From assembly GCA_002269645.1 (NCBI GenBank), contig NIVC01001206.1:171850-235849 (forward strand): 64,000 nt of DNA. Reading direction: 5' to 3'. Position numbers and translations under genes: made by a program. The DNA is from Macrostomum lignano (Eukaryota). Positions 1 through 63,697 of this stretch are shown here, piece by piece; position 1 is the first letter of the stretch; each line of letters starts with the position of its first letter. The notes beneath the pieces are model-generated. The model worked only from the letters and a program-made list of their open reading frames with translations, did not search any database and was not told where the DNA came from.

Positions 1-579
1 TATCCGTCTAAGATACCTTTACGATCCGCGGTAAACTCTTGCGCCACAGACTCGCAGATACTCCAGTCCAGATATCGAGCTCCTAGACGTCCATGCCCTC
101 CTAGCCTTGTCTTGCCAGTTAAAAGGATAGGATAAGCAATGGAATAGTGTCTAGAAGTCTGCCCCTTCGGGGGGGGGGGGCGGACCCACTCGGCGAAAGT
201 CAACACTCTGCCCCGGCTCTAGGGGGGGGGGGGGTGAATTTGACAGGCTTTGATTGACACCTGCCAATCTAGCTTGTAGTCGCACTGGCGGACGTAAGCT
301 CTGACCCCGCGGGCCATTCTCAGCTCAATTCATGGAGCAGCAAAGGAGGGTCAGTGGCAGACAGGCTGATTGCATAATTCTGTTGAGCTGAGTCAGGTTT
401 TTAAAATAACTGAACCGAGACAAGTCAAGCAAGGCCCAGAGCTGGCAAATTTTGAATTCGTGTCTAAAATTGATAATTCACGAACCAGGTGGGGACGCAG
501 GCACAGAAAAGTTCGTACAAGTTTTGTTTTTAAGTTGAACAACGTTGACGCATTTCACCAGACTTTAATCAGACTTCAC

Positions 580-682
580 CTAACCCCAACCCTAACCCTA
601 GCCCTAACCCTAACCCTAGCCCTAACCCTAACCCTAGCCCTAACCCTAACCCTAGCCCTAACCCTAACCCTAGCCCTAACCA
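580..682. repeat. Interstitial telomere-like repeat (CCCTAA)n with regular CCCTAG variants
   Basis: About 16 hexamers, mostly in the pattern CCCTAA-CCCTAA-CCCTAG; TTAGGG is the common metazoan telomere unit. Confidence 0.85.
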
Positions 683-1224
683 TAAGATACGATTTCACTA
701 AATAGACTAAATCCATTTGTAAAATTTCTAAACTTCCTAATTCTGATATAAGACGAATGCAAAAAAGACAAAATCCCCATTTAAACTACTGCAAGTAGGT
801 TTAGCGAATATAGCTGGAGAATCTCAAAAACTGTGCCGGATATGCCGGCTGACTATAATTGGCATTGACAGCTAGTCACTGGCCGAACATGGAAATCCCT
901 TCATTTTATTTCTCCCTTCCCAGCATGATTTGTTCCCCATCGCGTCTAAGCTGAAACCTCGCCATTCTCGTGGGGATTCCAGAAGTTTCCATAGCTGGTC
1001 AAGAACTAGGGAAGCCACGCAGCGGGGATGCGATGGGCGCTGTCAATCAACTTCACTTTCCTCCTTCGTGTCTGATGCATCCACAGAATCTGCTGTTTAT
1101 CTGAAATTCTCCATTGTTGGAATTTTCCCGATATTATTGCCAGATCAAACATCAAGTTAAAACCTTATCATAACTCATTCCAATTACAAAAGTTTGTTGT
1201 TAGTCTGAAACAAATCAATAATTT

Positions 1225-1863
1225 CAGGGACTTCTACGATATAGATTTACCATAGAATAGAAAAGAGGATCCTACCCCTAGGTCCTAAAATCCTCCGTTT
1301 TCTATTCTCCGCCCCTTCAACCCTCTGTTTTCCACTCTCCGCCCCTCCAATCCTCCGTTTTCTATTCTCCGCCCCTCCAATCCTCCGTTTTCTATTCTCC
1401 GCCCCTCCAATCCTCCGTTTTCTATTCTCCGCCCCTCCAATCCTCCGTTTTCTATTCTCCGCCCCTTCAATCCTCCGTTTTCTATTTTCCGCCCCTTCAA
1501 TCCTCCGTTTTCTACTCTCCGCCCCTTCAATCCTCTGTTTTCTACTCTCCGCCCCTTCAACCCTCCACCCTTTCAATCCTCTGCCCCTTCAACCCTCCAC
1601 CCTTTCAATCCTCTGCCCCTTCAACCCTCCGCCCCTTCAATCCTCTGCCCCTTCAACCCTCCACCCTTTCAATCCTCTGCCCCTTCAACCCTCCACCCTT
1701 TCAATCCTCTGCCCCTTCAACCCTCCACCCTTTCAATCCTCTGCCCCTTCAACCCTCCGACCCTTCAATCCTCTGCCCCTTCAACCCTCCGCCCCTTCAA
1801 TCCTCCGCTGCCCTTCTGCGGTCTTTTCTATTCTCTGGTAAGTTTATATCACAGAAGTCCCTG
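1225..1863. mobile_element. Non-autonomous TIR element (MITE; CAGGG termini) carrying internal 30-bp and 16-bp minisatellites
   Basis: 42-bp imperfect TIRs: CAGGGACTTCTACGATATAGATTTACCATAGAATAGAAAAGA at 1225 versus its reverse complement ending at 1863, 5 mismatches. ATAATTT flanks both sides (1218-1224, 1864-1870). Interior is TCAATCCTCCGTTTTCTATTCTCCGCCCC-type repeats. Confidence 0.75.
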
Positions 1864-2030
1864 ATAATTTTTAACAAGACCATCAACAAGAAGCTCAGAG
1901 ATCGCATTGTCTATGGCATTTCCATTTTCAGCCTTGCTCGAACGCACCGAGTTCAATGCAGTTTTCGCCAGGAAAGCGAATTGGGGTAAAACAGACGTCA
2001 AAAGGCAACAATCGCATTGTCAGAATAATC

Positions 2031-5000
2031 ATGAGCTCAACCGAAGTCAACGAACTATTCGTCCTGATCAGCCCGCCATCGCCTGACGCCAACACGAACG
2101 CGAACGACGGCGTGCTGCAAGAGAGTCTCAGCAGCAGCGCCAGCGGCGGCAGCAACGGTCAGCGCCTCGAGTGCGGCTGCCCGCGCTACCGGCCTCGCGT
2201 ACCGGAAGTGCAGAGCGTTGTGACGAGCGTCAGCCTGTCGCACTCGGTAGTGCAGGACCCCAACCGGGTGCTGGCGCAGCTGCCGAAGCAGCGCAAGAGG
2301 CCGGAGGAGCGGCTGTTCCTGCTGGACGCCTGGCTCCGCCGGCCGGCCCTGTATTACACTAGCGAGCTCATCCACGCCTTCATCGATGCGTTCAGCCCGC
2401 TACGCCTGCCAGCTGGCAAGAGGCTCATTCGCGAACGGGACCCCATCAAGCAGTGCTACCTGGTCTACAAAGGCCAGCTCAGGGCGTTGCGCAGTCACCC
2501 GGCGCCCTGCGGCCTGCAGTACCAGACCGGACTGCTTGAGTGCGGAGCCGAGCTGTTCTTTGACCCGCTGTGCATCGGCCAGGCCTCCCAGTTCAGCTGC
2601 GTGGCCGCCGAGGACTCGCTGCTGTTCTCCCTCGGCTTGAAGGACCTCGGCGGTTTGACGGCCGCGGCCAATGAGATCCGCCGGGGCGCCTTTCTCGAGT
2701 GCCTTCGCAGCATCAAGTACCTGCGGCCGCTGCCCGCTAGAGAGCTGCACGCCCTGGCTGAGAGCTGGGACGAGCCGTTAAAGGTGCGAATAGGAATTGT
2801 TAGTCTCAGTATCAATATATTGTTAATAGTGTGTTCAAAATTTTCCATGAAAGTTTTTAAAGTTGTCATTTACAGGCCGCAAAAGCATCCAAAGTAAATT
2901 TTCACGATTCAAGAAGTGCATGGTAAATTAATCTATAAGAGTTTAAAAAGTTCAACATTTTTCTTGATAGTAGTAAACTACTACTAGTAGGATGATGCAA
3001 AAATTAAAAACTGCAGACCTACGACTACGAAGCCGGCTACGTGCTGCAAGAGGAAGGCTCGGTGCCCGACCGGCTCTTCTGCATCCTGCAGGGCGGAGTC
3101 AGCCTGACCGACTCTCGCGGCTTCTCAGCGCGCCGCGGCGCCGGCCGGACAGCGCTGCTCCGCCTGCCGTCGCCCTACACCGCTACAGTCGAGGAGCTTT
3201 CAACTCTAGTCAGCCTTGAAGTCGGCCTGTGCCCCCGATCGATCTTCAACCAGCTGATTGAGGATTCCGAAGCGCTGGAGCGCGCCTCCGAAGAGCTCCG
3301 CTCTGAATTGACCCGCGACGAAGAGGAGGCTGCAGCAGCCGCGGCCGCCGCGGCCGATGCCGAGCAGATTGCCGAGGCCGCCGCTGCCGCCGAGGCCGAG
3401 CAAGCCCGGAGCAGGCTGAACCTGCCAGCCATTCACCGACGCTCCGTGCTGCGCCTGTGCCGAGTTCCGCAGCTCAGCGGCCTCCTGCGGCCAACTGAAC
3501 TGGACGGCCTCTTCGGCGACCGGGTGCAGATGGCGACGCATATTTTGACGTTACAGAAAAATGACTGCCTTTACGCAGAGGGCATCGACTACGCGAAGTA
3601 TGTGTACGTTGTACTGGAAGGCGAGCTGCGCGAGACGGCGCCGGTGGGGCCGGACGGGTCGCACGCCCTGCTGGGAATCGTCAGGCGCGGCGGCTGCGCC
3701 TGCCTGGAGTCGCTGCTGCTTCAGAGCGCCTGCCACTGCCAGCGTTCCGCCTACGCCAACACGGCCTGCACGGTGGTTGCGCTGGACGTCGATGCCATGG
3801 AGGAGGGCCTCTGCCGCAGTTTCATCTCGGTGATGAAGCGAAGAACGGAGACGTTCCGTCGGTGTGTTGGCGCTGCCCAGCTGACAGCGGTAGACGAGGA
3901 TCGAGCCTTCCGGGACGAGGTGTTTCCGCCGACTAGGGACGAGCTCCTGAGCAGCGAGCAAAGCGGCGGTCTGCCAGCCGGCCGGGACGAGCTCACCTTC
4001 AAGGCCTTGGCGGTGATGCGCTTGGTGGCTGCCCAGATTCAACAGATGCTGGAGCCCCTTGGCGATGATGTTCTGACTGCGAGCGAACTGAGGTCACTGC
4101 GGCTTTGCCATCGGGCGGTTATTCTGGGCGGCCGTGGCGGCGGCCGATTCTCCGACGGAGACCTGATGGTCACAGAGGAGGCCTCGCGCAGGCGGATCAT
4201 CTACTTCTTGCAGAGCGGCGAGGCGGAGGTGACTCACACAGCGCGCTGCGGCGGTGGAAGCGGCTGCATCTCGCAGGTTTGAAATATCATTGAAGCCCAA
4301 TTGAAACTCGCAGGAACTCTCGGGAAATCTCTCTATATTTTTCAGGAACGGACAGAGACTCGCCCGGCTGGCAGTCTGCTGTGCCCCGAGCAGCTCTACC
4401 TGCCGGCCGTGTGCTGCTTCGAAGCTCGCGCGAAGCAGGACGGCACGGAGCTCGCCTTAGTCAATCAGCACGTCCTTGAGACGGCAATTGGCTGCGAATT
4501 TCGCGACATTTTCCTGCGCCGGCCGGACGCTTTTCGAGCCTACCTGGCGGCCAGGTACCCCAGCGCAGCGGAGGCCGACCTGCAGCTGCTAACCGCCGCA
4601 GCATCGGCCGAGTCGTTGCCAGCGGCTGCTGGCAGAGTCTACGCCTTCGGCCTTGAAGCCCTGATGTGCCATCAGCAAGTGGGACGGCTGTTCACCGACC
4701 GCGAGCTGCAGAGGCTGAGGGCCAGCCAAGCCAGCATAATGTCGTGCATCGATGAGAAGCAGCCGAACCAGAGCATCTTCTTGGAGGTGGGCGAACGGTT
4801 AAACAGACATTCTTTTGTGCATTCTTTCGTCGTATCCTTATCAGACACGCACGAGCTATGAACTCCAACAGCTTCCTTTTCTCTCTTTTCAATCAGATAA
4901 AATGAGTCACTGTGTCTTGATGCGACTGAACAAGGAACCTGCATTAGTGACCACAGTACCCAATATTCTTGCCCCCTTTAGCTCATATTCTGAGCTCTTC

Positions 5001-5564
5001 CTTCTCTTTTTCCTCTCCTGCCAGGGCTCGGACCAGATCACCAGCCTCTTCATCGTCTACTCCGGTCGCGTCACCAGCTCGGCCACCCCGGGGCCCAACC
5101 GGCCAAGTCAGCTGCTGGACACGCACGAGCCCGGCGAGTTGGTTGGCACCGAGGCGATGCTCCGACAGGGTCTGCGATCGACCTCCGCGTACGCAGCCTC
5201 AGCTACGGAGCTCATCGTTGTGCCCGTTGACAAGCTGGAAGCGGTAGTCGGCGCCACGGTGTCCGAGCTCCTGGCTCGAGACCAGGACGTCGCGCTCGCC
5301 CTTTTCCGTCGGATCTTCCAGCCGGGCGTGCCGCTGCCGCGCGACGGCTGGCGGCCTGGCGTGGAGCCGCAGCGGCTTCAGCAGCTGCAGTCGGCAGCGG
5401 CGGTCACGGCGGCGGCGGCGGCGGAAAGCTGCGGCAGGCGGCTGCGCGGTCGGCACCTGCGCGTTGAAGCCGAGATTCTTCGCGAATCGGAAGGCGGAGG
5501 AGGCCGGATGAGCTGCGAGTACTCGGCTGGCGCCCCGTGGACTGACGATAAGCAAATTTCTTAG
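2031..5564 (+). CDS. Multi cyclic-nucleotide-binding (CNB/CAP-ED) domain protein, ~997 aa, five tandem CNB-homology domains; join(2031-2783,3017-4276,4346-4786,5025-5564)
   Basis: Three phase-0 GT-AG introns join the ORF blocks in frame. Repeated CNB beta-roll signature: LPAGKRLIRERDPIKQCYLVYKGQL; YEAGYVLQEEGSVPDRLFCILQGGV; LQKNDCLYAEG..YVYVVLEGEL; FSDGDLMVTEE..IYFLQSGEAEV; QPNQSIFLEGS..LFIVYSGRV..GELVGTEAML..RSTSAYA. Start could alternatively be ATG 1956. Confidence 0.85.
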
Positions 5565-13655: not shown

Positions 13656-15395
13656 ATCCAAAGCGCAGCCTCTCCGACTTACCTCAAGCAAGGAGTTGCT
13701 AAAGCAGCTCATGTAATTAGTGGACTCCCACACGACCCCGCGACTAGTCTTGGTCTCCCAGGTGCCGTCCTCCGTGCATTGGATTGAAAAAGTGTCTGCC
13801 GGGTGCAAAAAAGGGGATATTAGGCGTCTGAAATGCACTGTATACGAGTACAAAATAATATTGTACATCCTACTGAACAGGTTTTGATTAGCTTTCAATT
13901 TGATAGACCAGATATTGCGTGCAGCAACTACTCTGGCATTAGAGGCAAAAAGTTGAATCATTCAGCTGGCAATGAGGCGACTTTCTCCCGGCAGGATGTG
14001 AACAAAGCAGATGGTCACGAACTTTCGAGCGGCACTATTTGATTTGAGATTTGTTAAAAGTGCAACTTGGCTTGTTGCACTGCCATCGGACGGGGCAGAG
14101 TGTTTCTTGCTCGAACTGGCATACAAACCCTTAACTGTGGTTTTGGAACATTCGTCCCAATTAGTCACCCATCCTGGCCACCCTCAAGTTCCATCAAAGT
14201 ACACCCACAAACAAGTTTGTCTCAGTAATGTGTAGTTTTTAATGTCGTCTTATAAGCTCATCCACTCATCCTCATCCTAATCAGCTAACAAGCACACTCG
14301 CCAGGAAGCACACTCCCCAGGAAGCACACTCTCCAGGAAGCACACTCCCCAGAAAGCACACTCTCCAGCAAGCACACTCTCAAGGAAGCACACTCTCCAG
14401 GAAGTACACTCCCCAGGAAGCACACTCTCCAGGAAGCACACTCCCAGGAAGCACACTCCCAGGAAGCATACTATCCAGGAAGCACACTCTCCAGGAAGCA
14501 CACTCTCCAGGAAGCACTCTCTCCAGGAAGCACACTTTCCAGGAAGCACACTCTCCAGGAAGCACACTCTCCAGGAAGAACACTCTCCAGGAAGTACACT
14601 CTCCAGGAAGCACACTCTCCAGGAAGCACACTCTCCAGGAAGCACACTCTCCAGGAAGCACACTCTCCAGGAAGTACACTCCCCAAGAAGCACACTCTCC
14701 AGGAAGCACACTCCCAGGAAGCACACTCCCAGGAAGCACACTCTCCAGCAAGCACACTCTCCAGGAAGCATACTCTCCAGGAAGCACACTCTCTAGGAAG
14801 CACACTCGCCCCAGTTTTCACTCGGCAGTCACTCACTGTTCGGATTGGCGCTGGGCAGGTAGGTCGGGCAGCCGTACTTAGTCGAGGATCCGCTAGCCGT
14901 TGCGTTGATGCAGTGCAGGCCGTCCCAGGTGGCCGGGCACATCGCTCCGGCAGCGGCCTCGGCGGAGGCCTCCGCCCCAGTCGCCAGCTGAGCCCGGCAG
15001 CAGGCCACAGCAGCCAGGCAGCAGCGGCGCAGCATGGTTGAGCAGTCCTCAACCTGGGGCGCGTGCTTCGGCTCGAGCCGAACAAATGCCGAGCAGACGT
15101 CCGCAGAGAACTGAGTCTCGTTGAAGAATCTGAGCTGCTTGGAAGTTTGCAGCGCGTACAGCACCCTGTCCGCTCTGGTGTACATGAACTGAAAGCAGTG
15201 CACGCAGCTGTATTTTCTGAATATTCTCGGCAGCAGTCGGGTGCCATTGTGGGCTCGGCACGTCGGCTGCGGCGGCTGCGGCGGCTGCGACGGCGAGGTT
15301 AGATCTGTCGATCGACGGTCGACGGTCGACGAAGGAGCCGCGGCCGAAGCCAGTAGACAGCAGGCGAGAAGCGCGGCCAGGCACTGGCGTGGCAT
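7175..15395 (-). CDS. Class B1 (secretin/calcitonin/PDF/PTH-receptor family) GPCR, ~579 aa; complement join(15395-14837,13795-13683,12495-12404,12321-12132,11914-11764,11366-11291,11018-10952,10877-10795,8890-8710,7402-7175)
   Basis: Signal peptide; hormone-receptor domain CPATWDGLHC..CPTY..QCTEDGTW..TNYMSC; TM2 RVVIHVNLF; TM3 MFMWIFVEGFYLH..YYVLGWG; ECL2 RCW; TM5 LNVIFFINILRILLKKL; TM6 KATCILVPLFGLQW; TM7 SHGAIVATVFCFANNEV. All nine introns are GT-AG and phase-consistent (1740 nt). Subfamily cannot be assigned by eye. Confidence 0.93.
8010..8272 (-). mobile_element. hAT/Charlie-like terminus plus CT-rich tract; dispersed family copy B
   Basis: Minus strand reads CAGGGTTCGGCAGACTCCGGCCCGCGGGTCACGTGCAGCCCACAAAGCCTGTCTATCCGGCCCGC, then a CT-rich run. 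Confidence 0.55.
8417..8666. mobile_element. Foldback-like palindrome: two inverted arrays of a 16-bp unit
   Basis: (TATCACAAACCCGAAA)n at ~8417-8525 faces (TTTCGGGTTTGTGATA)n at ~8572-8666 across a ~45-bp spacer. Confidence 0.75.
9240..10520. repeat. 8-bp satellite (TTCTAAGA/TTCTAAGC) with ~379-bp higher-order period
   Basis: Diagnostic AAGAAC variant in the same context ends at 9440, 9819 and 10198. Confidence 0.9.
12950..13655. repeat. 24-bp minisatellite (TTAGTGGCTTGGTGTCTGTGCGTC) followed by (GTCT)n
   Basis: Direct inspection; lies in intron 2 of the class B GPCR. Confidence 0.9.
14290..14810. repeat. 16-bp minisatellite (CAGGAAGCACACTCTC)
   Basis: Direct inspection; intron 1 of the class B GPCR, ending ~25 bp from the donor. 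Confidence 0.9.
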
Positions 15396-23971: not shown

Positions 23972-24371
23972 CCCGCTAGATTCTATCAGACAAAATCAAT
24001 TGACAGGTCGATTTTAGAATTTCTATAATAGACAATAAATGCAAGTTACTCTACTTACTCAGTAGTGCAGTTGGCTTTACAGAAGGCAAATTAATGCCAG
24101 CCCTGAAAGCAGATGTCGATCTACTATTCCTATGCTCTATTTTTAGAGGCATTGCACTGGAAACAGCGAAACCTAATTAGCACCCTGCTTTGCCTTCGCG
24201 TGTCGCCTTGATATCATCTGCTATCCAAGAAGATAATCCCTGCTGCCAAAGCCTCTGATGGATTATAGAAACATCTGGATTGTTTTTGCTTGTATGTATG
24301 ATAAAAATCGATTTTATTTATACTAAAGCCGAGAGCTAATTAAATTTGACCATCTAAATTCAAAACCGGCT

Positions 24372-27300
24372 CAGTGACAGTTTATTGTCAGTTCAGTGGC
24401 AGTTTATTGTCAGTTCAGTGACAGTTTATTGTCAGTTCAGTGACAGTTTATTGTCAGTTCAGTGACAGTTTATTGTCAGTTCAGTGACAGTTTATTGTCA
24501 GTTCAGTGACAGTTTATTGTCAGTTCAGTGACAGTTTATTGTCAGTTCAGTGGCAGTTTATTGTCAGTTCAGTGACAGTTTATTGTCAGTTCAGTGACAG
24601 TTTATTGTCAGTTCAGTGACAGTTTATTGTCAGTTCAGTGACAGTTTATTGTCAGTTCAGTGGCAGTTTATTGTCAGTTCAGTGACAGTTTTTTGTCAGT
24701 TCAGTGGCAGTTTATTGTCAGTTCAGTGACAGTTTATTGTCAGTTCAGTGACAGTATGTTGTCAGTTCAGTGACAGTTTATTGTCAGTTCAGTGACAGTT
24801 TATTGTCAGTTCAGTGGCAGTTTATTGTCAGTTCAGTGACAGTTTATTGTCAGTTCAGTGACAGTTTATTGTCAGTTCAGTGACAGTTTATTGTCAGTTC
24901 AGTGGCAGTTTATTGTCAGTTCAGTGACAGTTTATTGTCAGTTCAGTGACAGTTTATTGTCAGTTCAGTGACAGTTTATTGTCAGTTCAGTGACAGTTTA
25001 TTGTCAGTTCAGTGGCAGTTTATTGTCAGTTCAGTGACAGTTTATTGTCAGTTCAGTGACAGTTTATTGTCAGTTCAGTGGCAGTTTATTGTCAGTTCAG
25101 TGACAGTTTATTGTCAGTTCAGTGACAGTTTATTGTCAGTTCAGTGACAGTTTATTGTCAGTTCAGTGACAGTTTATTGTCAGTTCAGTGACAGCTTATT
25201 GTCAGTTCAGTGACAGTTTATTGTCAGTTCAGTGACAGCTTATTGTCAGTTCAGTGACAGTTTATTGTCAGTTCAGTGACAGTTTATTGTCAGTTCAGTG
25301 ACAGTTTATTGTCAGTTCAGTGACAGTATATTGTCAATTCAGTGACAGTCTCTAGTCAGTTCAGTGACAGTTTATTGTCAGTTCAGTGACAGTATGTTGT
25401 CAGTTCAGTGACAGTTTATTGTCAGTTTAGTGACAGTTTTTTGTCAGTTCAGTGACAGTTTATTGTCAGTTCAGTGACAGTTTATTGTCAGTTCAGTGGC
25501 AGTTTATTGTCAGTTCAGTGACAGTTTTTTGTCAGTTCAGTGGCAGTTTATTTTCAGTTCAGTGACAGTTTATTGTCAGTTCAGTGACAGTATGTTGTCA
25601 GTTCAGTGACAGTTTATTGTCAGTTCAGTGACAGTTTATTGTCAGTTCAGTGGCAGTTTATTGTCAGTTCAGTGACAGTTTTTTGTCAGTTCAGTGGCAG
25701 TTTATTGTCAGTTCAGTGACAGTTTATTGTCAGTTCAGTGACAGTTTATTGTCAGTTCAGTGACAGTTTATTGTCAGTTCAGTGACAGTTTATTGTCAGT
25801 TCAGTGACAGTTTATTGTCAGTTCAGTGACAGTTTATTGTCAGTTCAGTGACAGTTTATTGTCAGTTCAGTGGCAGTTTATTGTCAGTTCAGTGACAGTT
25901 TATTGTCAGTTCAGTGACAGTTTATTGTCAGTTCAGTGACAGTTTATTGTCAGTTCAGTGACAGCTTATTGTCAGTTCAGTGACAGCTTATTGTCAGTTC
26001 AGTGACAGTTTATTGTCAGTTCAGTGACAGTTTATTGTCAGTTCAGTGACAGTTTATTGTCAGTTCAGTGACAGTATATTGTCAATTCAGTGACAGTCTC
26101 TAGTCAGTTCAGTGACAGTTTATTGTCAGTTCAGTGACAGTATGTTGTCAGTTCAGTGACAGTTTATTGTCAGTTCAGTGACAGTTTTTTGTCAGTTCAG
26201 TGACAGTTTATTGTCAGTTCAGTGACAGTTTATTGTCAGTTCAGTGGCAGTTTATTGTCAGTTCAGTGACAGTTTTTTGTCAGTTCAGTGGCAGTTTATT
26301 GTCAGTTCAGTGACAGTTTATTGTCAGTTCAGTGACAGTATGTTGTCAGTTCAGTGACAGTTTATTGTCAGTTCAGTGACAGTTTATTGTCAGTTCAGTG
26401 GCAGTTTATTGTCAGTTCAGTGACAGTTTTTTGTCAGTTCAGTGGCAGATTATTGTCAGTTCAGTGACAGTTTATTGTCAGTTCAGTGACAGTTTATTGT
26501 CAGTTCAGTGACAGTTTATTGTCAGTTAAGTGACAGTATATTGTCAATTCAGTGACAGTCTCTAGTCAGTTCAGTGACAGTTTATTGTCAGTTCAGTGAC
26601 AGTATGTTGTCAGTTCAGTGACAGTTTATTGTCAGTTCAGTGACAGTTTTTTGTCAGTTCAGTGACAGTTTATTGTCAGTTCAGTGACAGTTTATTGTCA
26701 GTTCAGTGGCAGTTTATTGTCAGTTCAGTGACAGTTTTTTGTCAGTTCAGTGGCAGTTTATTGTCAGTTCAGTGACAGTTTATTGTCAGTTCAGTGACAG
26801 TTTATTGTCAGTTCAGTGACAGTTTATTGTCAGTTCAGTGGCAGTTTATTGTCAGTTCAGTGACAGTTTATTGTCAGTTCAGTGACAGTTTATTGTCAGT
26901 TCAGTGACAGTTTATTGTCAGTTCAGTGACAGTTTATTGTCAGTTCAGTGACAGTATGTTGTCAGTTCAGTGACAGTTTATTGTCAGTTCAGTGACAGTT
27001 TATTGTCAGTTCAGTGACAGCTTATTGTCAGTTCAGTGACAGCTTATTGTCAGTTCAGTGACAGTTTATTGTCAGTTCAGTGACAGTTTATTGTCAGTTC
27101 AGTGACAGTTTATTGTCAGTTCAGTGGCAGTTTATTGTCAGTTCAGTGACAGTTTTTTGTCAGTTCAGTGGCAGTTTATTGTCAGTTCAGTGACAGTTTA
27201 TTGTCAGTTCAGTGACAGTATGTTGTCAGTTCAGTGACAGTTTATTGTCAGTTCAGTGACAGTTTATTGTCAGTTCAGTGGCAGTTTATTGTCAGTTCAG

Positions 27301-29925
27301 TGACAGTTTTTTGTCAGTTCAGTGGCAGTTTATTGTCAGTTCAGTGACAGTTTATTGTCAGTTCAGTGACAGTTTATTGTCAGTTCAGTGACAGTTTATT
27401 GTCAGTTCAGTGACAGTTTATTGTCAGTTCAGTGGCAGTTTATTGTCAGTTCAGTGACAGTTTATTGTCAGTTCAGTGACAGTTTATTGTCAGTTCAGTG
27501 GCAGTTTATTGTCAGTTCAGTGACAGTTTATTGTCAGTTCAGTGACAGTTTATTGTCAGTTCAGTGACAGTTTATTGTCAGTTCAGTGACAGTTTATTGT
27601 CAGTTCAGTGACAGCTTATTGTCAGTTCAGTGACAGTTTATTGTCAGTTCAGTGACAGCTTATTGTCAGTTCAGTGACAGTTTATTGTCAGTTCAGTGAC
27701 AGTTTATTGTCAGTTCAGTGACAGTTTATTGTCAGTTCAGTGACAGTATATTGTCAATTCAGTGACAGTCTCTAGTCAGTTCAGTGACAGTTTATTGTCA
27801 GTTCAGTGACAGTATGTTGTCAGTTCAGTGACAGTTTATTGTCAGTTTAGTGACAGTTTTTTGTCAGTTCAGTGACAGTTTATTGTCAGTTCAGTGACAG
27901 TTTATTGTCAGTTCAGTGGCAGTTTATTGTCAGTTCAGTGACAGTTTTTTGTCAGTTCAGTGGCAGTTTATTTTCAGTTCAGTGACAGTTTATTGTCAGT
28001 TCAGTGACAGTATGTTGTCAGTTCAGTGACAGTTTATTGTCAGTTCAGTGACAGTTTATTGTCAGTTCAGTGGCAGTTTATTGTCAGTTCAGTGACAGTT
28101 TTTTGTCAGTTCAGTGGCAGTTTATTGTCAGTTCAGTGACAGTTTATTGTCAGTTCAGTGACAGTTTATTGTCAGTTCAGTGACAGTTTATTGTCAGTTC
28201 AGTGACAGTTTATTGTCAGTTCAGTGACAGTTTATTGTCAGTTCAGTGACAGTTTATTGTCAGTTCAGTGACAGTTTATTGTCAGTTCAGTGGCAGTTTA
28301 TTGTCAGTTCAGTGACAGTTTATTGTCAGTTCAGTGACAGTTTATTGTCAGTTCAGTGACAGTTTATTGTCAGTTCAGTGACAGCTTATTGTCAGTTCAG
28401 TGACAGCTTATTGTCAGTTCAGTGACAGTTTATTGTCAGTTCAGTGACAGTTTATTGTCAGTTCAGTGACAGTTTATTGTCAGTTCAGTGACAGTATATT
28501 GTCAATTCAGTGACAGTCTCTAGTCAGTTCAGTGACAGTTTATTGTCAGTTCAGTGACAGTATGTTGTCAGTTCAGTGACAGTTTATTGTCAGTTCAGTG
28601 ACAGTTTTTTGTCAGTTCAGTGACAGTTTATTGTCAGTTCAGTGACAGTTTATTGTCAGTTCAGTGGCAGTTTATTGTCAGTTCAGTGACAGTTTTTGTC
28701 AGTTCAGTGGCAGTTTATTGTCAGTTCAGTGACAGTTTATTGTCAGTTCAGTGACAGTATGTTGTCAGTTCAGTGACAGTTTATTGTCAGTTCAGTGACA
28801 GTTTATTGTCAGTTCAGTGGCAGTTTATTGTCAGTTCAGTGACAGTTTTTTGTCAGTTCAGTGGCAGTTTATTGTCAGTTCAGTGACAGTTTATTGTCAG
28901 TTCAGTGACAGTTTATTGTCAGTTCAGTGACAGTTTATTGTCAGTTAAGTGACAGTATATTGTCAATTCAGTGACAGTCTCTAGTCAGTTCAGTGACAGT
29001 TTATTGTCAGTTCAGTGACAGTATGTTGTCAGTTCAGTGACAGTTTATTGTCAGTTCAGTGACAGTTTTTTGTCAGTTCAGTGACAGTTTATTGTCAGTT
29101 CAGTGACAGTTTATTGTCAGTTCAGTGGCAGTTTATTGTCAGTTCAGTGACAGTTTTTTGTCAGTTCAGTGGCAGTTTATTGTCAGTTCAGTGACAGTTT
29201 ATTGTCAGTTCAGTGACAGTTTATTGTCAGTTCAGTGACAGTTTATTGTCAGTTCAGTGGCAGTTTATTGTCAGTTCAGTGACAGTTTATTGTCAGTTCA
29301 GTGACAGTTTATTGTCAGTTCAGTGACAGTTTATTGTCAGTTCAGTGACAGTTTATTGTCAGTTCAGTGACAGTATGTTGTCAGTTCAGTGACAGTTTAT
29401 TGTCAGTTCAGTGACAGTTTATTGTCAGTTCAGTGACAGCTTATTGTCAGTTCAGTGACAGCTTATTGTCAGTTCAGTGACAGTTTATTGTCAGTTCAGT
29501 GACAGTTTATTGTCAGTTCAGTGACAGTTTATTGTCAGTTCAGTGACAGTATATTGTCAATTCAGTGACAGTCTCTAGTCAGTTCAGTGACAGTTTATTG
29601 TCAGTTCAGTGACAGTATGTTGTCAGTTCAGTGACAGTATGTTGTCAGTTCAGTGACAGTTTATTGTCAGTTCAGTGACAGTTTATTGTCAGTTCAGTGA
29701 CAGTTTATTGTCAGTTCAGTGACAGTTTATTGTCAGTTCAGTGACAGTATGTTGTCAGTTCAGTGACAGTATGTTGTCAGTTCAGTGACAGTTTATTGTC
29801 AGTTCAGTGACAGTTTATTGTCAGTTCAGTGACAGTTTATTGTCAGTTCAGTGACAGTTTATTGTCAGTTCAGTGACAGTTTATTGTCAGTTCAGTGACA
29901 GTTTATTGTCAGTTCAGTGACAGTA
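24372..29925. repeat. 22-bp satellite (CAGTTTATTGTCAGTTCAGTGA), ~250 copies, with 2420-bp higher-order duplication
   Basis: Direct inspection; rare variants recur at +2420 bp. Confidence 0.95.
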
Positions 29926-32870: not shown

Positions 32871-33289
32871 CAAACAAAGCACAGGATCTGTTGTGCCAAT
32901 TTTTTCCGTTTGCGTCAGCAAAACAGAGGCGCAATGTACTTTACGCAAAGCCCGGCCTGCACTGGCGTAATTATGTCCGTAATTTTATCAGATTTAATTA
33001 AATAAGTCAGTAAAACTGGACCCGAAGACTGCAGTCCCCACCCTTTGATCTCGGCGCTTTTGCACTGGGCAAGCCGCGTAAACATCTTTCTTTAAAAAGT
33101 CACACTTGCACCAGAAAGAACTGGGGAAGGAAAAGCCGGAGGGGGGCTGCACTTTGAAAACCGCACTGAAAATCTAATAAAAAGCCTTTCTAAAACGAGT
33201 TTGATAATTTGACCAACATCCTTGTTTGTAGAGTTCTCAACAACAACAAAGTACGCATCCCCGTATGTTAGGTTACATTTTGAGCAGGG

Positions 33290-33800
33290 CGCGTCAGATG
33301 GCTGAACGGGCCCTGAAAGGTGAGCAGCAGGACGTCCTGAACAGGTTGGGGGCAGTAGCCCTCGGCCCGGATCACGTGGTCTGCCAGTCGAAGTCGCCAC
33401 CGATGCAGGATGGTGGGCGGGCGCTGCAGCTTGGCCCGATCGTACAGGGCCTCGGTCCCGACGCTCTCGTCAGCTCGAAAGGCCGCACGGAGCAGCTCTG
33501 AGTGCGCCGAGTCCAACTGCCGCTCCAGTGTAACCGTCAGCGTCCACGTCTCGGCGTTGTATAGCAGGACCACCGCCTGCCACAGCCGAGCCCTCTGGCG
33601 GTCGGGCAGCGCTTTGGACTGGAGGACGGCTCGGATCGAACGGAAGGCCGCCCAGGCAAGTCCTTTGCAAGACCTCAACCAGCCTGTCAATCTGGACGAG
33701 GACAGGAGGGCGGAGTCGTCGGCGTAGCCAAGCACGCTCAGACGCTTTTCGCTGTGGCGGCGCAGCAGGAAGCCGTCGTCAGCCGAGGGGAGTGCGGTCC
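33290..33800 (-). mobile_element. RTE-clade-like non-LTR retrotransposon RT fragment with internal deletion
   Basis: ORF 33268-33825: LGYADDSALL catalytic motif fused almost directly to the post-RT block LLYNAETWTL...RLRLADHVIR typical of RTE/CR1-group elements. Confidence 0.75.
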
Positions 33801-33864
33801 GTGAAATATGGAAATTGTGGTGCATATTCGCTCCCGAGCTCTGTCTGCCCCTCAGCTACGTCTT

Positions 33865-34587: not shown

Positions 34588-46607
<12,020 letters not shown>

Positions 46608-50211: not shown

Positions 50212-51750
<1,539 letters not shown>

Positions 51751-52479
51751 GTCAGCAGTCAGTCAGGACGCGTCGCGTGTCGGGCCGCCCGAGCAGTGTA
51801 CCGATCCGGACGCGTGTCTGTGACGCGAGAAGGACGCGCTCAATGAAGCTGTCTTTCAGTTTCGTCGAGTCTTCATTTTCCGCCTTGTCTAAAACCCCTC
51901 CTGCTGCGGTGCCCCCGGCCTTGACCCGGCAGTCTTTGCTGCTCCAAAGCTCACGCGAGCTTTCGATAAAAAAGCGGGAGAAGCAGGAAAAATATCCCTT
52001 AGCCCTTAGCATAAGCTCGGCGCAGATCCCCTTTGCCAAGTTCTCCCCACATGAGGCTCGGAGGCGGCACTCGTTGAGCTTCTCATCTCGTAGGAAACCC
52101 TCGAGCAGAAAATTCTGAGCACTGAGACGCTGGCCGCCGGGCGCTAGTCTGTGAAAGTTTCGAATTTTCGATCGAAAACAGAAGACATTTTTATTTACCT
52201 TTCATTCAGCTGCATTGAAGCAAATAAGGAAATCGAGTTCAAGCAACAACTGCATACACTTGTTGATAAAAAGCAGGCAAATGTCAGCTTGCAGGGGTAC
52301 AAAATCTTTCAGTGGACAGAATTAAATAAATCAGTGGAATAGATGAGATGCGTTGAGCAGTAAGAATCTAATCTGTTATCAAATCGTTGATTTGATCCAT
52401 AATATTGTCCATAAGCTTAGTCATGCTTAATCCTATTCACAATAATCCGATCCATTATCGTGTCAATGATCCAATTCAT

Positions 52480-52813: not shown

Positions 52814-55800
52814 TCAGTCGATCCGATTAGCCCTGATCCGGCCAGCCGGCCAGCCAGTCAGCAGGCAGACGCCGGCGCCGGCCCGCCGCAGCGCCAATCC
52901 GGGCGCCGCCTCCCAGGCGCCGGCCGCCGGGTCCAGCCGCTCGGCGCTGCCCAAGTAAGCGACGCCGTCGTGGCCTCCCACCGCGTACAGGCGGCCCCAG
53001 AGGGCCACCGCGCCGAGGCCGCCGCGGGCGACGCTCATGGGCGGCAAGTCGAGCCAGCGGTTGCAGCGCGGGTCGAACCGCTCGACGCTCGCCACTGCGC
53101 CGCGATCGTCGAAGCCGCCAAGGACGCAGACGCCGCGGCCGGCCTCGTCAGCAGCCGCCGCCGCTCCGGCCCTCGGCCGCCGCATGGAGGCCGCCGGCAG
53201 CCACATGTTCTTCACCGGGTCGTACAGTTCGCAGGTGGACAGAGCGGCCGAGGAGTCGTTGCCGCCGCAGACCAGCAGGCGGCTGCCGGAGTCCACGGGG
53301 GCGCCAGCGGAGCCGCCGCGAGGAGTTTGAGTTGGCGCCACCGGCGCCCAGCTGGGAAATATGGAGAGAGAAATTCTCGCATTGTTACTCAGGTGAGTAG
53401 TATATGCTGATGCATAGAAATCAATAACCAAATTTGTTGACACGTCAAGAGGTAAAGATGAGCATAAATATGAAACCATAGAATAGACGATAGATCACCC
53501 AGCAGACCCGATAGATCACCCAGCAGACCCGATAGATCACCCAGCAGACCCGATAGATCACCCAGCAGACCGGATAGATCCCCCATACGACTGTCCCGAT
53601 GCCCCCCGCAGCGGAGTCACCATCGCGTCGGACAGCCTCAGCGCGATCACCGCCCTGAGCAGCGGCCCCCTGACGCAGACCGACCCGGCTGCAGCCGAAT
53701 GCTGGAAACTCCTCCTGCAGCTCGGTCGGTTGGACCGCAAGGTAAAGTTCTGCTGGATACCGGCGCACTGCGGCCTCTCCGGCAATGAGGCGGCAGACAG
53801 GGCGGCGGCCAGGGCGGCGGACCTCGACCAGCGACAAGTCCCGCTCCCGCTCAGTGCCGCCAGGACGGCGACACGCCACTCCAGACGCGCTCTTGATGAA
53901 CTGGCGGTCCCGACCCACTGGAAGCCACCGAGCCACCTCCCACGCCGCCTACAAGTTATTGTCAACCAGCTTAGAGCCGGCGCCAGCACCATCAACCGCA
54001 GCACTAGGTTCAGACTCGGCATCGACACCTCGCCCGACTGCCTCGACTGCGGTGCGCTGGATACGGTTCAGCACGTCCTATTCGAGTGCCCCAGAGGCGA
54101 CCGCCTACGGGCAGCTCAAGGGCTCGCACCCGAGGACCTGATGGGGTCCCCGGATGCCATTATCGGGCTCACTCGCAGCATGGGGCGTCTGCCCCCCTCC
54201 AGATCGGCCGGTCCGCACACGGAGGCGCCTTGAAGAAGAAGAAGAAGAAGAAGATCCCCCATAGACCCGAAAGATCACCCAGCAGACCCGATAGATCCCC
54301 CATAGACCCGATAGATCACCCACCAGACCGGATAGATCACCCCACAGACCCGATAGATCACCCACAGACCCGATAGACCCCCCAGCAGACCCGATAGACC
54401 CCCCCATAGACCCTAAAGATCACCCAGCAGACCCTAAAGATCACCCAGCAGACCCGATAGATCACCCAGCAGACCCAATAGATCACCCAGCAGACCCGAT
54501 AGATCTCCCAGCAGACCCGATAGATCACCCAGCAGACGCACCGGTCAGCAGCCGGGTCGTAGCGCTCCACAGTTTCAAAGCAGGCTGCATCGTCGAGACC
54601 TCCAACGGCGAACAGGCAGCCGCTGAGGGACACCAGGGCGAGGCCTCGACGAGCTGTGGACATCCGCGCCACCCGGCGCCAGCTGTTCTCCTCCGGCAGG
54701 TAGGCCTCCGCCGTGGCCAGGTGCGAATCGCCGTCGTGACCGCCCACTGCGTAGACAAGGCCTGCGGGCCGGCGGAGGGAGGCGGTGGGAAAACGCCATG
54801 CATTTCCAATATTGAATCTAAGTGCCTCCGCCCTCGGAATCCTCCGCCCTCGGAATCCTCCGCCCTCGGAATCCTCCACCCTCGGAATCCTCCACCCTCG
54901 GAATCCTCCGCCCTCGGAATCCTCCGCCCTCGGAATCCTCCGCCCTCGGAATCCTCCGCCCTCGGAATCCTCCACCCTCGGAATCCTCCGCCCTCGGAAT
55001 CCTCCGCCCTCGGAATCCTCCGCCCTCAGAATCCTCCGCCCTCAGAATCCTCCGCCCTCGGAATCCTCCGCCCTCGGAATCCTCCGCCCTCGGAATCCTC
55101 CGCCCTCGGAATCCTCCGCCCTCGGAATCCTCCGCCCTCGGAATCCTCCGCCCTCGGAATCCTCCGCCCTCGGAATCCTCCGCCCTCGGAATCCTCCGCC
55201 CTCGGAATCCTCCGCCCTCGGAATCCTCCGCCCTCGGAATCCTCCGCCCTCGGAATCCTCCGCCCTCGGAATCCTCCGCCCTCGAATCCTCCGCCCTCGG
55301 AATCCTCCGCCCTCGGAATCCTCCGCCCTCGGAATCCTCCGCCCTCGGAATCCTCCGCCCTCGGAATCCTCCGCCCTCGGAATCCTCCGCCCTCGGAATC
55401 CTCCGCCCTCGGAATCCTCCGCCCTCGGAATCCTCCGCCCTCGGAAACCTCCGCCCTCGGAATCCTCCGCCCTCGGAATCCTCCACCCTCGGAATCCTCC
55501 GCCCCCAAAATCCTCCGCCCCCAAAATCCTCCGCCCCTAAATCCGCCATCCGCTTTTTATAGCTCGTATATCTCCCTCTCCTCCAACTCCATCCTCTTTC
55601 ATCTCCCTTCTCCGCCCCTTTTTCGCCCTCCTCTCCGCCCCTTCCGCAAATCACCGTCAGTCACAGCCAGGCCGCAATGCCGTCGTCTCGTTCGCATTGG
55701 TTGAACCTAAAAACGAATTTAACGATGCTTTAATACCAGTAAATTACTATTAGTAGTGCGCAGAGAACGCGTAGTGAATAAAATATCGCGCTCTCGAACC

Positions 55801-62400: not shown

Positions 62401-63697
62401 AATCCAGCGAGTTGGCTAGACTAGCAATCCAGCGAGTTGGCTAGACTAGCAATCCAGCGAGTTGGCTAGACTAGCAATCCAGCAAGTTGGCTAGACTAGC
62501 AATCCAGCAAGTTGGCTAGACTAGCAATCCAGCACCCTCCGGTCGCACCCACCTGCCAGCCAGCTCATCCCTCTCGCCCGGCCGCGCCCGCAGCCACCGC
62601 ATGAGGCCGGAAAACGCCTGCACCTCGTCGGCGACGTCCAGCCGCTCGGATCGCAGCGCTGCCTCCATCGCCTCGGCCGACAGTTCGGCGAACTCCGGCG
62701 CCGCTGACAGCTCGTTGAAGCCGCCGATCAACCGGGCATCGGCGCTGGCCAGCAGGTCGCGCCGGCCCCACCGCTCGGCGGCTGCCCGCGCGGCGACAAT
62801 ATCTGCCGGCCTCGCCAGCAGGTGGTTGGCGATGAAGAGGTCGCAGCAGCGGGCCGCCGGCTCGAGCTGCAGAGCGCAGGCGGCGGCGAGCAGCGGCAGG
62901 GCGGTGTCGCCCGTCACCCGCAGGCAGCCGGTGTAGCAGAAGTCAACCAAGCTGGTCAGGACAGCCACGGAGGCTTCAGCTTCCGGCGGAAGCGTCATCA
63001 CATTGGATGCCGGCGCAGCTGCCGAAGCTGTCGAGCGGAATAGCGGGCTCCAGCAGGCCAGCACGAGGCGATGGCACGGCACGTCGCCGGCATCCGCCGC
63101 TGCTCCCGCCTCCGATTCGTCCGCTGGCTGCCGCATTGAAGACGACCGCAGCGTCAGGTCGCAGAGGCGGCCGGCCCGTCGCATCGCCCAGAGACTGCGG
63201 AAGCCGAGGTCGCTGTGGCCGGCCAGGCTGCACACTGCGGAGCCGAGCTTCGGGTCGAAGCGGACCAGCAGGCCGGCTGCGGCGGCGGCTGTGGAGGCGC
63301 CAGCCGAAGGGGAAGGCGGCTGCAGTGCCGGCGCTTGTCCTGCTGCTGCTGGCACTGGGCCTTCCAGGTGGACGGACACCTGCGACGCACCGATCGAAGG
63401 AGTGAAGAGCTGCCTGTTTATTTGAGAACCTACTCGTGATTTGTGATGAATTCATTTTGTTATCTCATTTTATATTTTTTCCCACATGCGGTTGAGTAGC
63501 GATACCTGCATGCAGACACTCACACGGGGTGTACAGCGGGCAACCTTGTTGGTTCGATGCTCGATTCTGCACGTCGTCTAATCCAATAACCACACAATAA
63601 GCAAAACTATCATAATTAAGCAGATTTACCTGTCAGGGAGATGCTGCTGATGCTGACTGATGCTCTGATGTTGGCATGGATGAGCCGCCTCCGACAT
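52814..63697 (-). CDS. KLHL8: Kelch-like protein 8 orthologue (BTB-BACK-6xKelch, Cul3 adaptor) with an internal in-frame TAG at 55936-55934; complement join(63697-63630?,63566-63524?,63379-62553,56159-55817,55706-55655,54761-54542,53351-52814)
   Basis: BTB: RRAGRLCDLTL..CHRLVLACWSPLF..LVDFCYTG. BACK: VADEVQAFSGLMRW..LLAHIRL. The Kelch blades follow the KLHL8 pattern in order as I recall it (FCVGGRG, RRRHCG, YAVGGHDG..HL, RRGLAL..GGLDD..CF, TPRGG, GGND, GGFDD, GGHDG.AYL, RAGAGV). The last five exons are phase-consistent; the two 5' micro-exons are tentative. Confidence 0.85.
53490..54540. repeat. 21-bp minisatellite (CACCCAGCAGACCCGATAGAT), interrupted by a LINE insertion
   Basis: Arrays at ~53490-53587 and 54252-54540. 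Confidence 0.9.
53588..54251 (+). mobile_element. 5'-truncated I-group-like non-LTR retrotransposon 3' end (RNase H + CCHC), 664 bp
   Basis: Open frame 53589-54233: TIASDSLSAITAL..VKFCWIPAHCGLSGNEAAD (RNase H) and CLDC-x7-H-x4-C; (GAA)7 tail; TSD AGATCCCCCATA at 53576-53587 and 54252-54263. Confidence 0.92.
54826..55545. repeat. 16-bp minisatellite (GGAATCCTCCGCCCTC)
   Basis: Direct inspection; shares the AATCCTCCGCCC core with 1287-1812 and 56240-57790. Confidence 0.93.
56240..57790. repeat. 30-bp minisatellite (TCAATCCTCCGTTTTCTACTCTCCGCCCCT) grading into a 16-bp unit (TCAATCCTCCGCCCCT)
   Basis: Direct inspection; same family as the interior of the MITE at 1225-1863. Confidence 0.92.
59013..59420. 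repeat. (GATA)n microsatellite
   Basis: Direct inspection. Confidence 0.95.
59875..60590. repeat. 14-bp purine-rich repeat (GGAGAGCAGAGAAT/AAG)
   Basis: Direct inspection. Confidence 0.9.
61550..61830. repeat. ~32-bp CT-rich minisatellite
   Basis: CTCTCTCTACTGTCTCCCCTC(C/T)CAGTCTCC units. Confidence 0.8.
62340..62535. repeat. 25-bp minisatellite (GGCTAGACTAGCAATCCAGCAAGTT), ~8 copies
   Basis: Direct inspection; starts ~17 bp into the intron after the BTB exon. Confidence 0.9.

What the first reader, a model, noticed from the sequence alone, without database searches (positions are those of the whole stretch)
2031..5564. ~1000-aa protein made only of five tandem cyclic-nucleotide-binding-homology domains
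Seen: five CNB beta-roll signatures, with N3A-like helical segments (e.g. FLECLRSIKYLRPLPARELHAL) in front of domains 2-5, and no kinase, GEF, patatin, D/D or transmembrane segment. Only domain 5 keeps a near-canonical phosphate-binding cassette (G-T-E-A-M-L..R-S-T-S-A). Domains 1-4 lack the key Arg. Established: PKA-R and CNBD2/CRIS have 2 CNBs, metazoan PKG 2 plus kinase, NTE/PNPLA6 3 plus patatin, apicomplexan PKG 4 plus kinase. Inference: possibly an undescribed cNMP sensor or scaffold with one live site and four pseudo-sites; the Ser after Arg hints at cGMP preference.
Basis: partly seen in the sequence, partly recalled or inferred. Interest (0 to 1): 0.75.

Follow-up and report, generated by a model that had tools for sequence, protein, structure and literature searches.

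The report
Flatworm protein of five cyclic-nucleotide-binding folds
This is a real, already-annotated but unstudied gene of the flatworm Macrostomum lignano whose 997-residue product consists only of five cyclic-nucleotide-binding-type modules, of which at most two look able to bind a ligand; it has no detectable orthologue elsewhere.

Summary
A four-exon + strand gene (2031-2783, 3017-4276, 4346-4786, 5025-5564; GT-AG, phase-0 introns) encodes 997 aa. It is identical to the Macrostomum lignano models Mlig021679 (PAA70796.1, UniRef A0A1I8H799), which are named only "cyclic nucleotide-binding domain-containing protein".

Pfam finds cNMP_binding and nothing else. d1, d3 and d5 pass the curated cut-off and d2 is sub-threshold. 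The proposed fourth domain is invisible to Pfam and to PDB sequence search. It is still homologous to d3 and d5: 15.2 bits against their profile, reached by 0 of 3000 shuffles. AlphaFold2 gives it a beta-roll as confident as theirs.

So five CNB-fold modules is supported, with one of them cryptic.

No kinase, GEF, patatin, docking or membrane segment is present. An exhaustive search of 1.84 billion representatives found no orthologue, only generic CNB hits.

It is most likely an effector-less cNMP receptor or scaffold with one or two live sites. The nearest functional analogue is trypanosome CARP1. I rate it a new variant of a known kind, of moderate interest.

The parts
2031..2783 (+). Exon 1 (aa 1-251): N-terminal tail, d1, and the alphaN/alphaA helices of d2. 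An alternative in-frame ATG at 1956 would add 25 aa.
   Evidence: Splice model; identical to PAA70796.1 and A0A1I8H799.
2784..3016 (+). Intron 1: 233 nt, GT..AG, 30% GC, phase 0.
3017..4276 (+). Exon 2 (aa 252-671): d2 beta-roll, acidic Ala/Glu linker, d3, first half of d4.
4277..4345 (+). Intron 2: 69 nt, GT..AG, phase 0. It lies inside the d4 beta-roll.
4346..4786 (+). Exon 3 (aa 672-818): second half of d4, the helices of d5, and beta1-2 of d5.
4787..5024 (+). Intron 3: 238 nt, GT..AG, phase 0. It lies inside the d5 beta-roll.
5025..5564 (+). Exon 4 (aa 819-997 plus stop): rest of d5 and an 82-aa C-terminal tail with no detectable domain.
2403..2654 (+). d1 CNB beta-roll (aa 125-208). Dead binding cassette: the Gly/Glu/Arg equivalents are F176/F177/S186.
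   Evidence: Pfam 27.6 bits; hhalign 96.8%; hmmalign.
3026..3220 (+). d2 CNB beta-roll (aa 255-319). Cassette G294-R295 ... P-Y305-T-A-T-V, so Glu is replaced by Arg and Arg by Tyr. The other genomic copy carries a 12-nt in-frame insertion (VCCQ) after position 3151.
   Evidence: Pfam 21.0 bits, E 3.2e-4, below cut-off; hhalign 91.4%; indel.
3254..3415 (+). Acidic Ala/Glu-rich helical linker (aa 331-384, pI 4.1) between the d1-d2 pair and the d3-d5 triplet.
   Evidence: This was the only segment with pLDDT above 50 in the single-sequence model.
3548..3805 (+). d3 CNB beta-roll (aa 429-514). Cassette at 3686-3766: C480-L481-E482 ... R494-S-A-Y-A. Arg is retained, Gly is lost, and there is a 4-residue insertion.
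   Evidence: Pfam 35.6 bits; AF2; hmmalign.
4136..4465 (+). d4 cryptic CNB-like beta-roll (aa 625-711, spanning intron 2). Cassette equivalents C684/P685(E686)/C694, so no Arg.
   Evidence: No Pfam or PDB hit; 15.2 bits vs HMM(d3+d5), 0 of 3000 shuffles; AF2 pLDDT blocks 54-85.
4760..5246 (+). d5 CNB beta-roll (aa 810-892, spanning intron 3). Best-preserved cassette at 5130-5201: G859-T860-E861-A-M-L ... R869-S-T-S-A.
   Evidence: Pfam 45.8 bits; PDB alignments to Crp and PKG II; hmmalign.

Best explanation
A transcript-supported Macrostomum lignano gene encodes a soluble protein of about 109 kDa built only from five CNB-fold modules. They are arranged as a d1-d2 pair, an acidic helical linker, then a d3-d4-d5 triplet that arose by internal duplication.

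d5 keeps the phosphate-clamping Arg. d3 also keeps it, less convincingly as a working site. d1, d2 and d4 are pseudo-sites.

The protein most likely acts as an effector-less cyclic-nucleotide receptor or scaffold. In this model, ligand binding at d5 (possibly also d3) repositions the helical subdomains, and the degenerate modules relay this to bind or release partner proteins, much as PKA-R, CRIS or trypanosome CARP1 work.

Shown: the gene model, the CNB-only architecture, which residues are preserved in each cassette, and the absence of orthologues. Inferred: ligand binding, allosteric coupling and the existence of partners.
For: - Gene model and identity to RNA-based annotations. The annotation method is described in PMC5730564.
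- PF00027 is the only family hit.
- d3 and d5 are related to each other (phmmer E 4e-10), and d4 is related to both.
- d3, d4 and d5 share a displaced Glu, [G/C]-x-E.
- AF2 predicts three beta-rolls of equal confidence. Foldseek then aligns about 500 columns to the four-CNB Plasmodium PKG at E 2.7e-13.
- Arg is retained at R494 and R869.
- There is no membrane segment.
- CARP1 is a precedent: three CNBs, only one canonical, and it binds cAMP at about 30 nM (PMC10354285).
Against: - No domain has the canonical Gly-Glu that contacts the ribose 2'-OH, so even d5 may bind weakly or not at all.
- The AF2 alignment contained tandem-CNB proteins aligned onto d4, so the d4 fold prediction is not independent of the hypothesis.
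- There are no orthologues, and the genomic copies differ by only two synonymous substitutions plus one in-frame indel. Purifying selection therefore cannot be demonstrated.
- No expression, localisation or binding data were found.
Confidence: 0.55

Rival explanations
1. Complete pseudo-receptor. All five modules have lost cyclic-nucleotide binding, as in KCNH channel CNBHDs or the nucleoside-binding trypanosome PKA-R. The protein would then be a structural or protein-interaction scaffold, or would bind a different small ligand.
For: No domain keeps Gly-Glu. d3, d4 and d5 share a shifted Glu. d3 has a 4-residue insertion in its cassette. All Pfam scores are low, 21-46 bits. An in-frame 4-aa indel is tolerated inside the d2 cassette. 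PDB entries for cAMP-independent trypanosome PKA-R appear among the fold matches.
Against: R869-S-T-S-A and R494-S-A keep the phosphate-binding Arg in its canonical context. As background knowledge, not tested here, Epac binds cAMP without the Glu.
Confidence: 0.3
2. Only four CNB domains. On this reading aa 540-760 is a non-CNB spacer, and its resemblance to d3 and d5 comes from composition and from the alignment supplied to AF2.
For: No Pfam hit at E<=10. No PDB sequence hit. hhalign against a generic CNB profile gives 1.8% probability and matches only beta2-beta4. The beta-roll alone scores just 5.3 bits against HMM(d3+d5).
Against: The whole segment scores 15.2 bits, reached by 0 of 3000 shuffles, while four non-overlapping control segments score about -1. 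The match is collinear from beta2 to beta8. MAFFT independently placed the first CNB of five tandem-CNB proteins on d4. AF2 pLDDT for d4 equals that of d3 and d5.
Confidence: 0.1
3. Fragment of a larger gene or polycistron. Unseen upstream or downstream exons would add an effector domain such as a kinase, GEF or channel.
For: The GenBank CDS is flagged partial at its 5' end, and the reading frame stays open upstream of the ATG at 2031 back to about 1926. The d1 N-flank weakly resembles the C-linker end of a plant CNG channel (9j34, E 0.013, not significant). [quoted passage not shown]
Against: The RNA-based models end at the same stop codon. The next annotated gene upstream lies more than 4 kb away, has no Pfam domain and is a separate gene; none is annotated within 10 kb downstream. 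Flanking ORFs are tandem-repeat artefacts with no Pfam hits.
Confidence: 0.05

Closest known systems
Trypanosoma brucei CARP1 (cAMP response protein 1)
   Same: Effector-less protein made of several CNB domains (three), of which only one has a canonical cassette and the others are degenerate, e.g. Arg replaced by Lys or Tyr. It is lineage-restricted and binds cAMP (PMC10354285).
   Different: It has three modules, not five, and its live site is fully canonical (F-G-E ... R). It is kinetoplastid-specific. No sequence relationship was detected: it is absent from the hits of the exhaustive search. This is an analogy, not a family membership.
CRIS / CNBD2
   Same: A metazoan cNMP receptor whose only recognisable motif is a CNBD, with no catalytic effector domain (PMC3854790).
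   Different: It is described with a single functional CNBD. It is reported as lacking in a diverse selection of protostomes. No CRIS-like hit at E<=1e-3 appeared in 1.84e9 representatives.
Apicomplexan PKG regulatory region (four tandem CNBs)
   Same: It is the best structural match: Foldseek E 2.7e-13 with about 500 aligned columns spanning d3-d5. It has tandem CNBs, one of which is degenerate.
   Different: PKG carries a C-terminal kinase domain, and none is present here. Sequence identity is 10-11%. TM-scores of 0.12-0.19 show that only the individual modules match, not their arrangement.
PKA regulatory subunit / metazoan PKG tandem CNB-A/B
   Same: The d1-d2 pair aligns across both domains of generic tandem-CNB proteins (P0007-P0009). 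PKG I and PKA-R are among the fold hits.
   Different: There is no docking/dimerisation domain, no inhibitor site and no significant sequence hit (PDB E>=0.02). The d1 and d2 cassettes are dead.
P0006, a bacterial-looking protein with five tandem CNBs (840 aa, metagenomic)
   Same: It is the only other protein scoring above 70 bits (72.8 bits, 27% identity), and it also has five tandem CNBs.
   Different: Its five repeats are near-identical to each other and all resemble d5. It has no introns or eukaryotic context and carries a different C-terminal domain. The shared architecture is therefore convergent, not orthologous.

Membership tests
CNB domain (Pfam PF00027 cNMP_binding) | A significant profile match for each proposed domain. 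| tested here: inconclusive
   d1 27.6, d3 35.6 and d5 45.8 bits reach the 27.5 cut-off. d2 scores 21.0 bits (E 3e-4), below it. d4 has no hit at E<=10. Whole protein E 2.6e-35.
CNB domain (Pfam PF00027 cNMP_binding) | An eight-stranded beta-roll with a short cassette helix, flanked by alphaN/alphaA and alphaB/alphaC helices. | tested here: met
   The AF2 model of aa 385-915 shows this for d3, d4 and d5 with pLDDT blocks of about 54-86. Foldseek matches CNB structures. d1 and d2 were not modelled with an alignment. The alignment used for the model was CNB-derived.
Ligand-competent CNB site | Cassette Arg that clamps the cyclic phosphate (R211 in the bovine RI-alpha numbering of PMC10354285; the R209 of the mature-protein numbering). 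| tested here: inconclusive
   Present in d3 (R494) and d5 (R869). Replaced in d1 (S186), d2 (Y305) and d4 (C694).
Ligand-competent CNB site | Cassette Gly-Glu, with the Glu contacting the ribose 2'-OH. | tested here: not met
   d1 F-F; d2 G-R; d3 C-L(E); d4 C-P(E); d5 G-T(E). In d3, d4 and d5 a Glu sits one residue later.
PKA regulatory subunit | An N-terminal docking/dimerisation domain, an inhibitor site, and exactly two CNBs. | tested here: not met
   No RIIa or other Pfam hit in aa 1-85. There are five modules. No R-subunit hit at E<=1e-3.
PKG | A Ser/Thr kinase domain C-terminal to the CNBs. | tested here: not met
   No Pkinase hit. The C-terminal tail is 82 aa with no domain.
Epac / RapGEF | DEP, REM and CDC25-homology GEF domains. 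| tested here: not met
   PF00027 is the only Pfam family.
NTE / PNPLA6-7 | A patatin domain and an N-terminal membrane segment. | tested here: not met
   No patatin hit. The highest 19-residue hydropathy mean is 1.35.
CNG / HCN / KCNH channels | Six-transmembrane pore module plus a C-linker. | tested here: not met
   No membrane segment. There is only a weak, non-significant resemblance of the d1 N-flank to the CNGC1 C-linker end (E 0.013).
CRIS / CNBD2 | Sequence orthology to metazoan CNBD2. | tested here: not met
   The exhaustive phmmer search of 1.84e9 representatives gave only 6 non-self hits, all generic tandem-CNB proteins. No direct pairwise comparison with a CNBD2 sequence was possible.
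CARP1 (kinetoplastid) | Sequence orthology to Tb CARP1. | not tested
The resemblance is architectural only.

The most novel reading that the evidence does not exclude
A flatworm-restricted, effector-less receptor in which one or two live CNB sites are allosterically read out through three or four pseudo-CNB modules. The shared shifted-Glu cassette ([G/C]-x-E ... R-S-x-S/A-A) would define a new ligand preference, such as low-affinity cNMP or a non-canonical nucleotide or nucleoside. That would make it a class of metazoan cNMP effector not described so far.
Probability: 0.12. Interest if true: 0.6.

Novelty: new variant of a known kind. Interest (0 to 1): 0.35.

Why it matters
Few kinds of metazoan cyclic-nucleotide effector are known (PKA, PKG, Epac, CNG/HCN channels, CRIS, and Popeye proteins from background knowledge). 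A five-module, effector-less CNB protein with no orthologue would be an independent invention of a cNMP receptor or scaffold, parallel to trypanosome CARP1.

It would also be a natural system for studying how pseudo-CNB modules relay allostery. M. lignano is tractable by RNAi and transgenesis, so this can be tested.

If none of the sites binds a ligand, the protein is simply a fast-evolving lineage-specific scaffold of limited general interest.

Tried and rejected
- **Apicomplexan origin.** I suspected this at first from the composition and repeats. It was rejected when the protein matched M. lignano records exactly.
- **Word-indexed homologue searches.** I ran three: the full protein, a d3/d4/d5 alignment, and a low-complexity-stripped concatenate. 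They returned only the protein's own cluster or nothing.
- **Single-sequence AF2.** The full-length model was unusable (pLDDT 35.7).
- **d4 alone.** It gave nothing against PDB sequences, and nothing convincing against Pfam or a generic CNB profile.
- **dN/dS between genomic copies.** There is no power: two synonymous substitutions plus one in-frame indel in 2994 nt.
- **Horizontal transfer or contamination.** I considered this because the best hits look bacterial and the CDS is 55-61% GC. I rejected it because the gene has three AT-rich GT-AG introns, lies among M. lignano repeats on at least three contigs, and other GC-rich exons occur in the window.
- **Assigning individual domains to a CNB subfamily through PDB hits.** All hits were non-significant, E>=0.013.
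- **Literature and supplement search for Mlig021679 or expression data.** Nothing was found.
Full report
**Gene and organism**

The interval 2031-5564 contains four + strand open segments. They join through three GT..AG introns (233, 69 and 238 nt; 30-44% GC; all phase 0) into a 2994-nt CDS of 997 aa.

The product is identical to database proteins of the free-living flatworm Macrostomum lignano. These are Mlig021679 g1-g3 (PAA70796.1, PAA56768.1, PAA56761.1) and UniRef A0A1I8H799, named only 'cyclic nucleotide-binding domain-containing protein' or 'hypothetical protein'.

The GenBank annotation of that assembly was derived from RNA-seq and transcriptome assemblies with trans-splice and poly(A) boundary evidence (PMC5730564). 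The exon structure is therefore transcript-supported, by inference from that method.

The first 13.6 kb of the window is 97-99% identical to NIVC01001206.1. In that record the next upstream gene lies more than 4 kb away and has no Pfam domain. No gene is annotated within 10 kb downstream.

An in-frame ATG at 1956 could add 25 residues. This does not affect the domain content.

**How many CNB domains**

On the whole protein Pfam reports only PF00027 (E 2.6e-35, four stretches). Scanned piecewise:

| Module | Residues | Pfam score | Against the 27.5-bit cut-off |
|---|---|---|---|
| d1 | 125-208 | 27.6 bits | passes, marginally |
| d2 | 255-319 | 21.0 bits (E 3e-4) | below |
| d3 | 429-514 | 35.6 bits | passes |
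| d4 | 540-745 | none at E<=10 | no hit |
| d5 | 810-892 | 45.8 bits | passes |

The two tails also give nothing.

d4 alone has no PDB sequence match. Against a profile of 12 unrelated CNB domains, hhalign gives only 1.8% probability, although the short match (beta2-beta4) is in the correct register.

The case for d4 rests on four points:
- phmmer aligns it collinearly with d3 across the whole roll and the alphaB/C helices.
- It scores 15.2 bits against an HMM built from d3+d5. This was reached by 0 of 2000 and 0 of 1000 composition-preserving shuffles (maxima 10.5 and 7.8), while four non-overlapping control segments score about -1.
- An unsupervised MAFFT alignment placed the first CNB of five tandem-CNB proteins exactly on d4 and the second on d5.
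- AF2 on aa 385-915 with that 8-row alignment predicts three beta-rolls of equal confidence: d3 at aa 424-508, d4 at aa 625-711 and d5 at aa 805-885, with pLDDT blocks of about 54-86. Each is flanked by helices, and the linkers have low confidence.

Foldseek then aligns about 500 columns of this model to the four-CNB Plasmodium PKG (E 2.7e-13), and about 320 columns to tandem-CNB PKG and PKA-R structures.

The AF2 and Foldseek result is not independent of the CNB hypothesis, because the alignment was made of CNB proteins. The shuffle test is independent.

I conclude that there are five CNB-fold modules, with d4 highly degenerate (about 0.85 confidence). d3, d4 and d5 form an internal-duplication group (d3 vs d5 E 4e-10). 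The introns lie at non-equivalent positions inside d2, d4 and d5, so the duplication left no exon-shuffling signature.

**Binding cassettes**

I aligned all five modules to the CNB profile. The published consensus is F-G-E-[LIV]-A-L-...-R-x-A, with Glu contacting the ribose 2'-OH and Arg the phosphate (PMC10354285).

| Module | Gly position | Glu position | Arg position |
|---|---|---|---|
| d1 | F176 | F177 | S186 |
| d2 | G294 | R295 | Y305 |
| d3 | C480 | L481 (then E482) | R494 |
| d4 | C684 | P685 (then E686) | C694 |
| d5 | G859 | T860 (then E861) | R869 |

- d3 and d5 retain the Arg in an R-S-x-(S/A)-A context.
- No domain has Gly-Glu.
- d3, d4 and d5 share a Glu displaced by one residue. 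This shared derived character further ties d4 to them.
- d3 also has a 4-residue insertion in its cassette.
- The second genomic copy has an in-frame VCCQ insertion inside the d2 cassette, which is consistent with that site being unconstrained.
- 'Ser after Arg' is not diagnostic of cGMP. The d5 alignments show R-S-A both in a Crp-family cAMP regulator (4ev0) and in PKG II (5bv6).

**What is absent**

- There is no kinase, GEF, patatin, DEP or docking domain.
- There is no membrane segment: the hydropathy maximum is 1.35.
- aa 331-384 form an acidic Ala/Glu helix (pI 4.1) separating d1-d2 from d3-d5.

**Relatives**

An exhaustive phmmer scan of 1.84 billion cluster representatives gave seven hits at E<=1e-3:
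- the protein's own cluster;
- a metagenomic protein with five near-identical CNB repeats (72.8 bits);
- five generic tandem-CNB proteins at 34-42 bits.

No metazoan PKA-R, PKG, Epac, PNPLA6/7 or CNBD2 sequence reached threshold. A true five-module orthologue would accumulate score across its modules and should have been detected.

Within what these libraries hold, the gene therefore has no detectable orthologue outside M. lignano. Other Macrostomum genomes and transcriptomes were probably not represented, so I could not determine how far within the genus the gene extends. PDB sequence hits for single domains are all non-significant, so no CNB subfamily can be assigned.

**Mechanism**

The best-supported reading is an effector-less cNMP receptor or scaffold with one probable site (d5) and one doubtful site (d3). 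The three pseudo-modules would transmit or buffer the conformational change to partner proteins.

Precedents:
- CARP1: three CNBs, one canonical, about 30 nM cAMP, no effector domain.
- CRIS: a single CNBD and nothing else recognisable.
- PKA-R: sequestration of the catalytic subunit (established knowledge).

Ligand binding, allostery and partners are inferences; nothing here tests them. The main rival is that all sites are dead and the protein is a pure scaffold or binds another ligand.

**Verdict**

The domain count is right, with one cryptic member.
- The site-by-site reading needs correction, and the cGMP hint is unfounded.
- The protein is already catalogued but uncharacterised.
- It is a new variant of a known kind (effector-less, multi-CNB proteins) and is of moderate interest.

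Noticed in passing
window 579-685: An interstitial telomere-like array (CCTAAC)n of about 18 copies lies 1.3 kb upstream of the CNB gene.
   Followed up: no
window 1289-1805 and 56241-57792: The same 30/32-bp C-rich tandem repeat (AATCCTCCGTTTTCTATTCTCCGCCCCTTC) occurs just upstream of the gene and again about 55 kb away.
   Followed up: no
window 6000-64000: Much of the rest of the window is satellite or tandem repeats, for example a 22-mer x252 at 24371-29924, a 17-mer x106 at 43820-45641, and GTTA x382 at 50213-51752. Most long ORFs there are repeat artefacts.
   Followed up: partly
window 52814-53479 (-) and 62516-63379 (-): Exons of a Kelch-like (KLHL-type) gene on the minus strand. One exon carries BTB (E 2.4e-11) and BACK (8e-11); another carries Kelch repeats (Kelch_1 1.5e-25). 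They are separated by about 9 kb of repeats.
   Followed up: partly
window 14829-15395 (-): An ORF whose C-terminal end gives a sub-threshold match to the hormone-receptor domain of class-B GPCRs (HRM, E 3.2e-4, 21.5 bits against a cut-off of 26.2).
   Followed up: no
window 53730-54233 (+) and 33268-33825 (-): Probable retroelement remnants. The first ORF has weak, below-cut-off RNase H (E 1.3e-4) and zf-RVT (E 8.8e-3) matches. The second looked RT-like by eye but has no Pfam hit.
   Followed up: no
window 3151 / L001 (NIVC01001206.1): The other genomic copy carries a 12-nt in-frame insertion (VCCQ) inside the d2 binding cassette. The only other CDS differences are two synonymous substitutions, at 3551 and 5108.
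   Followed up: yes
window 1907-2086 (+) and 1925-1931: A 59-codon upstream ORF overlaps the start region. A polypyrimidine-AG (ttttcag) lies at about 1925-1931, where the annotated transcript begins, and could be a spliced-leader acceptor.
   Followed up: no
protein aa 76-105 (window 2256-2345): The N-flank of d1 (VLAQLPKQRKRPEERLFLLDAWLRRPALY) weakly resembles the end of the C-linker of plant CNGC1 (9j34, E 0.013, not significant).
   Followed up: partly
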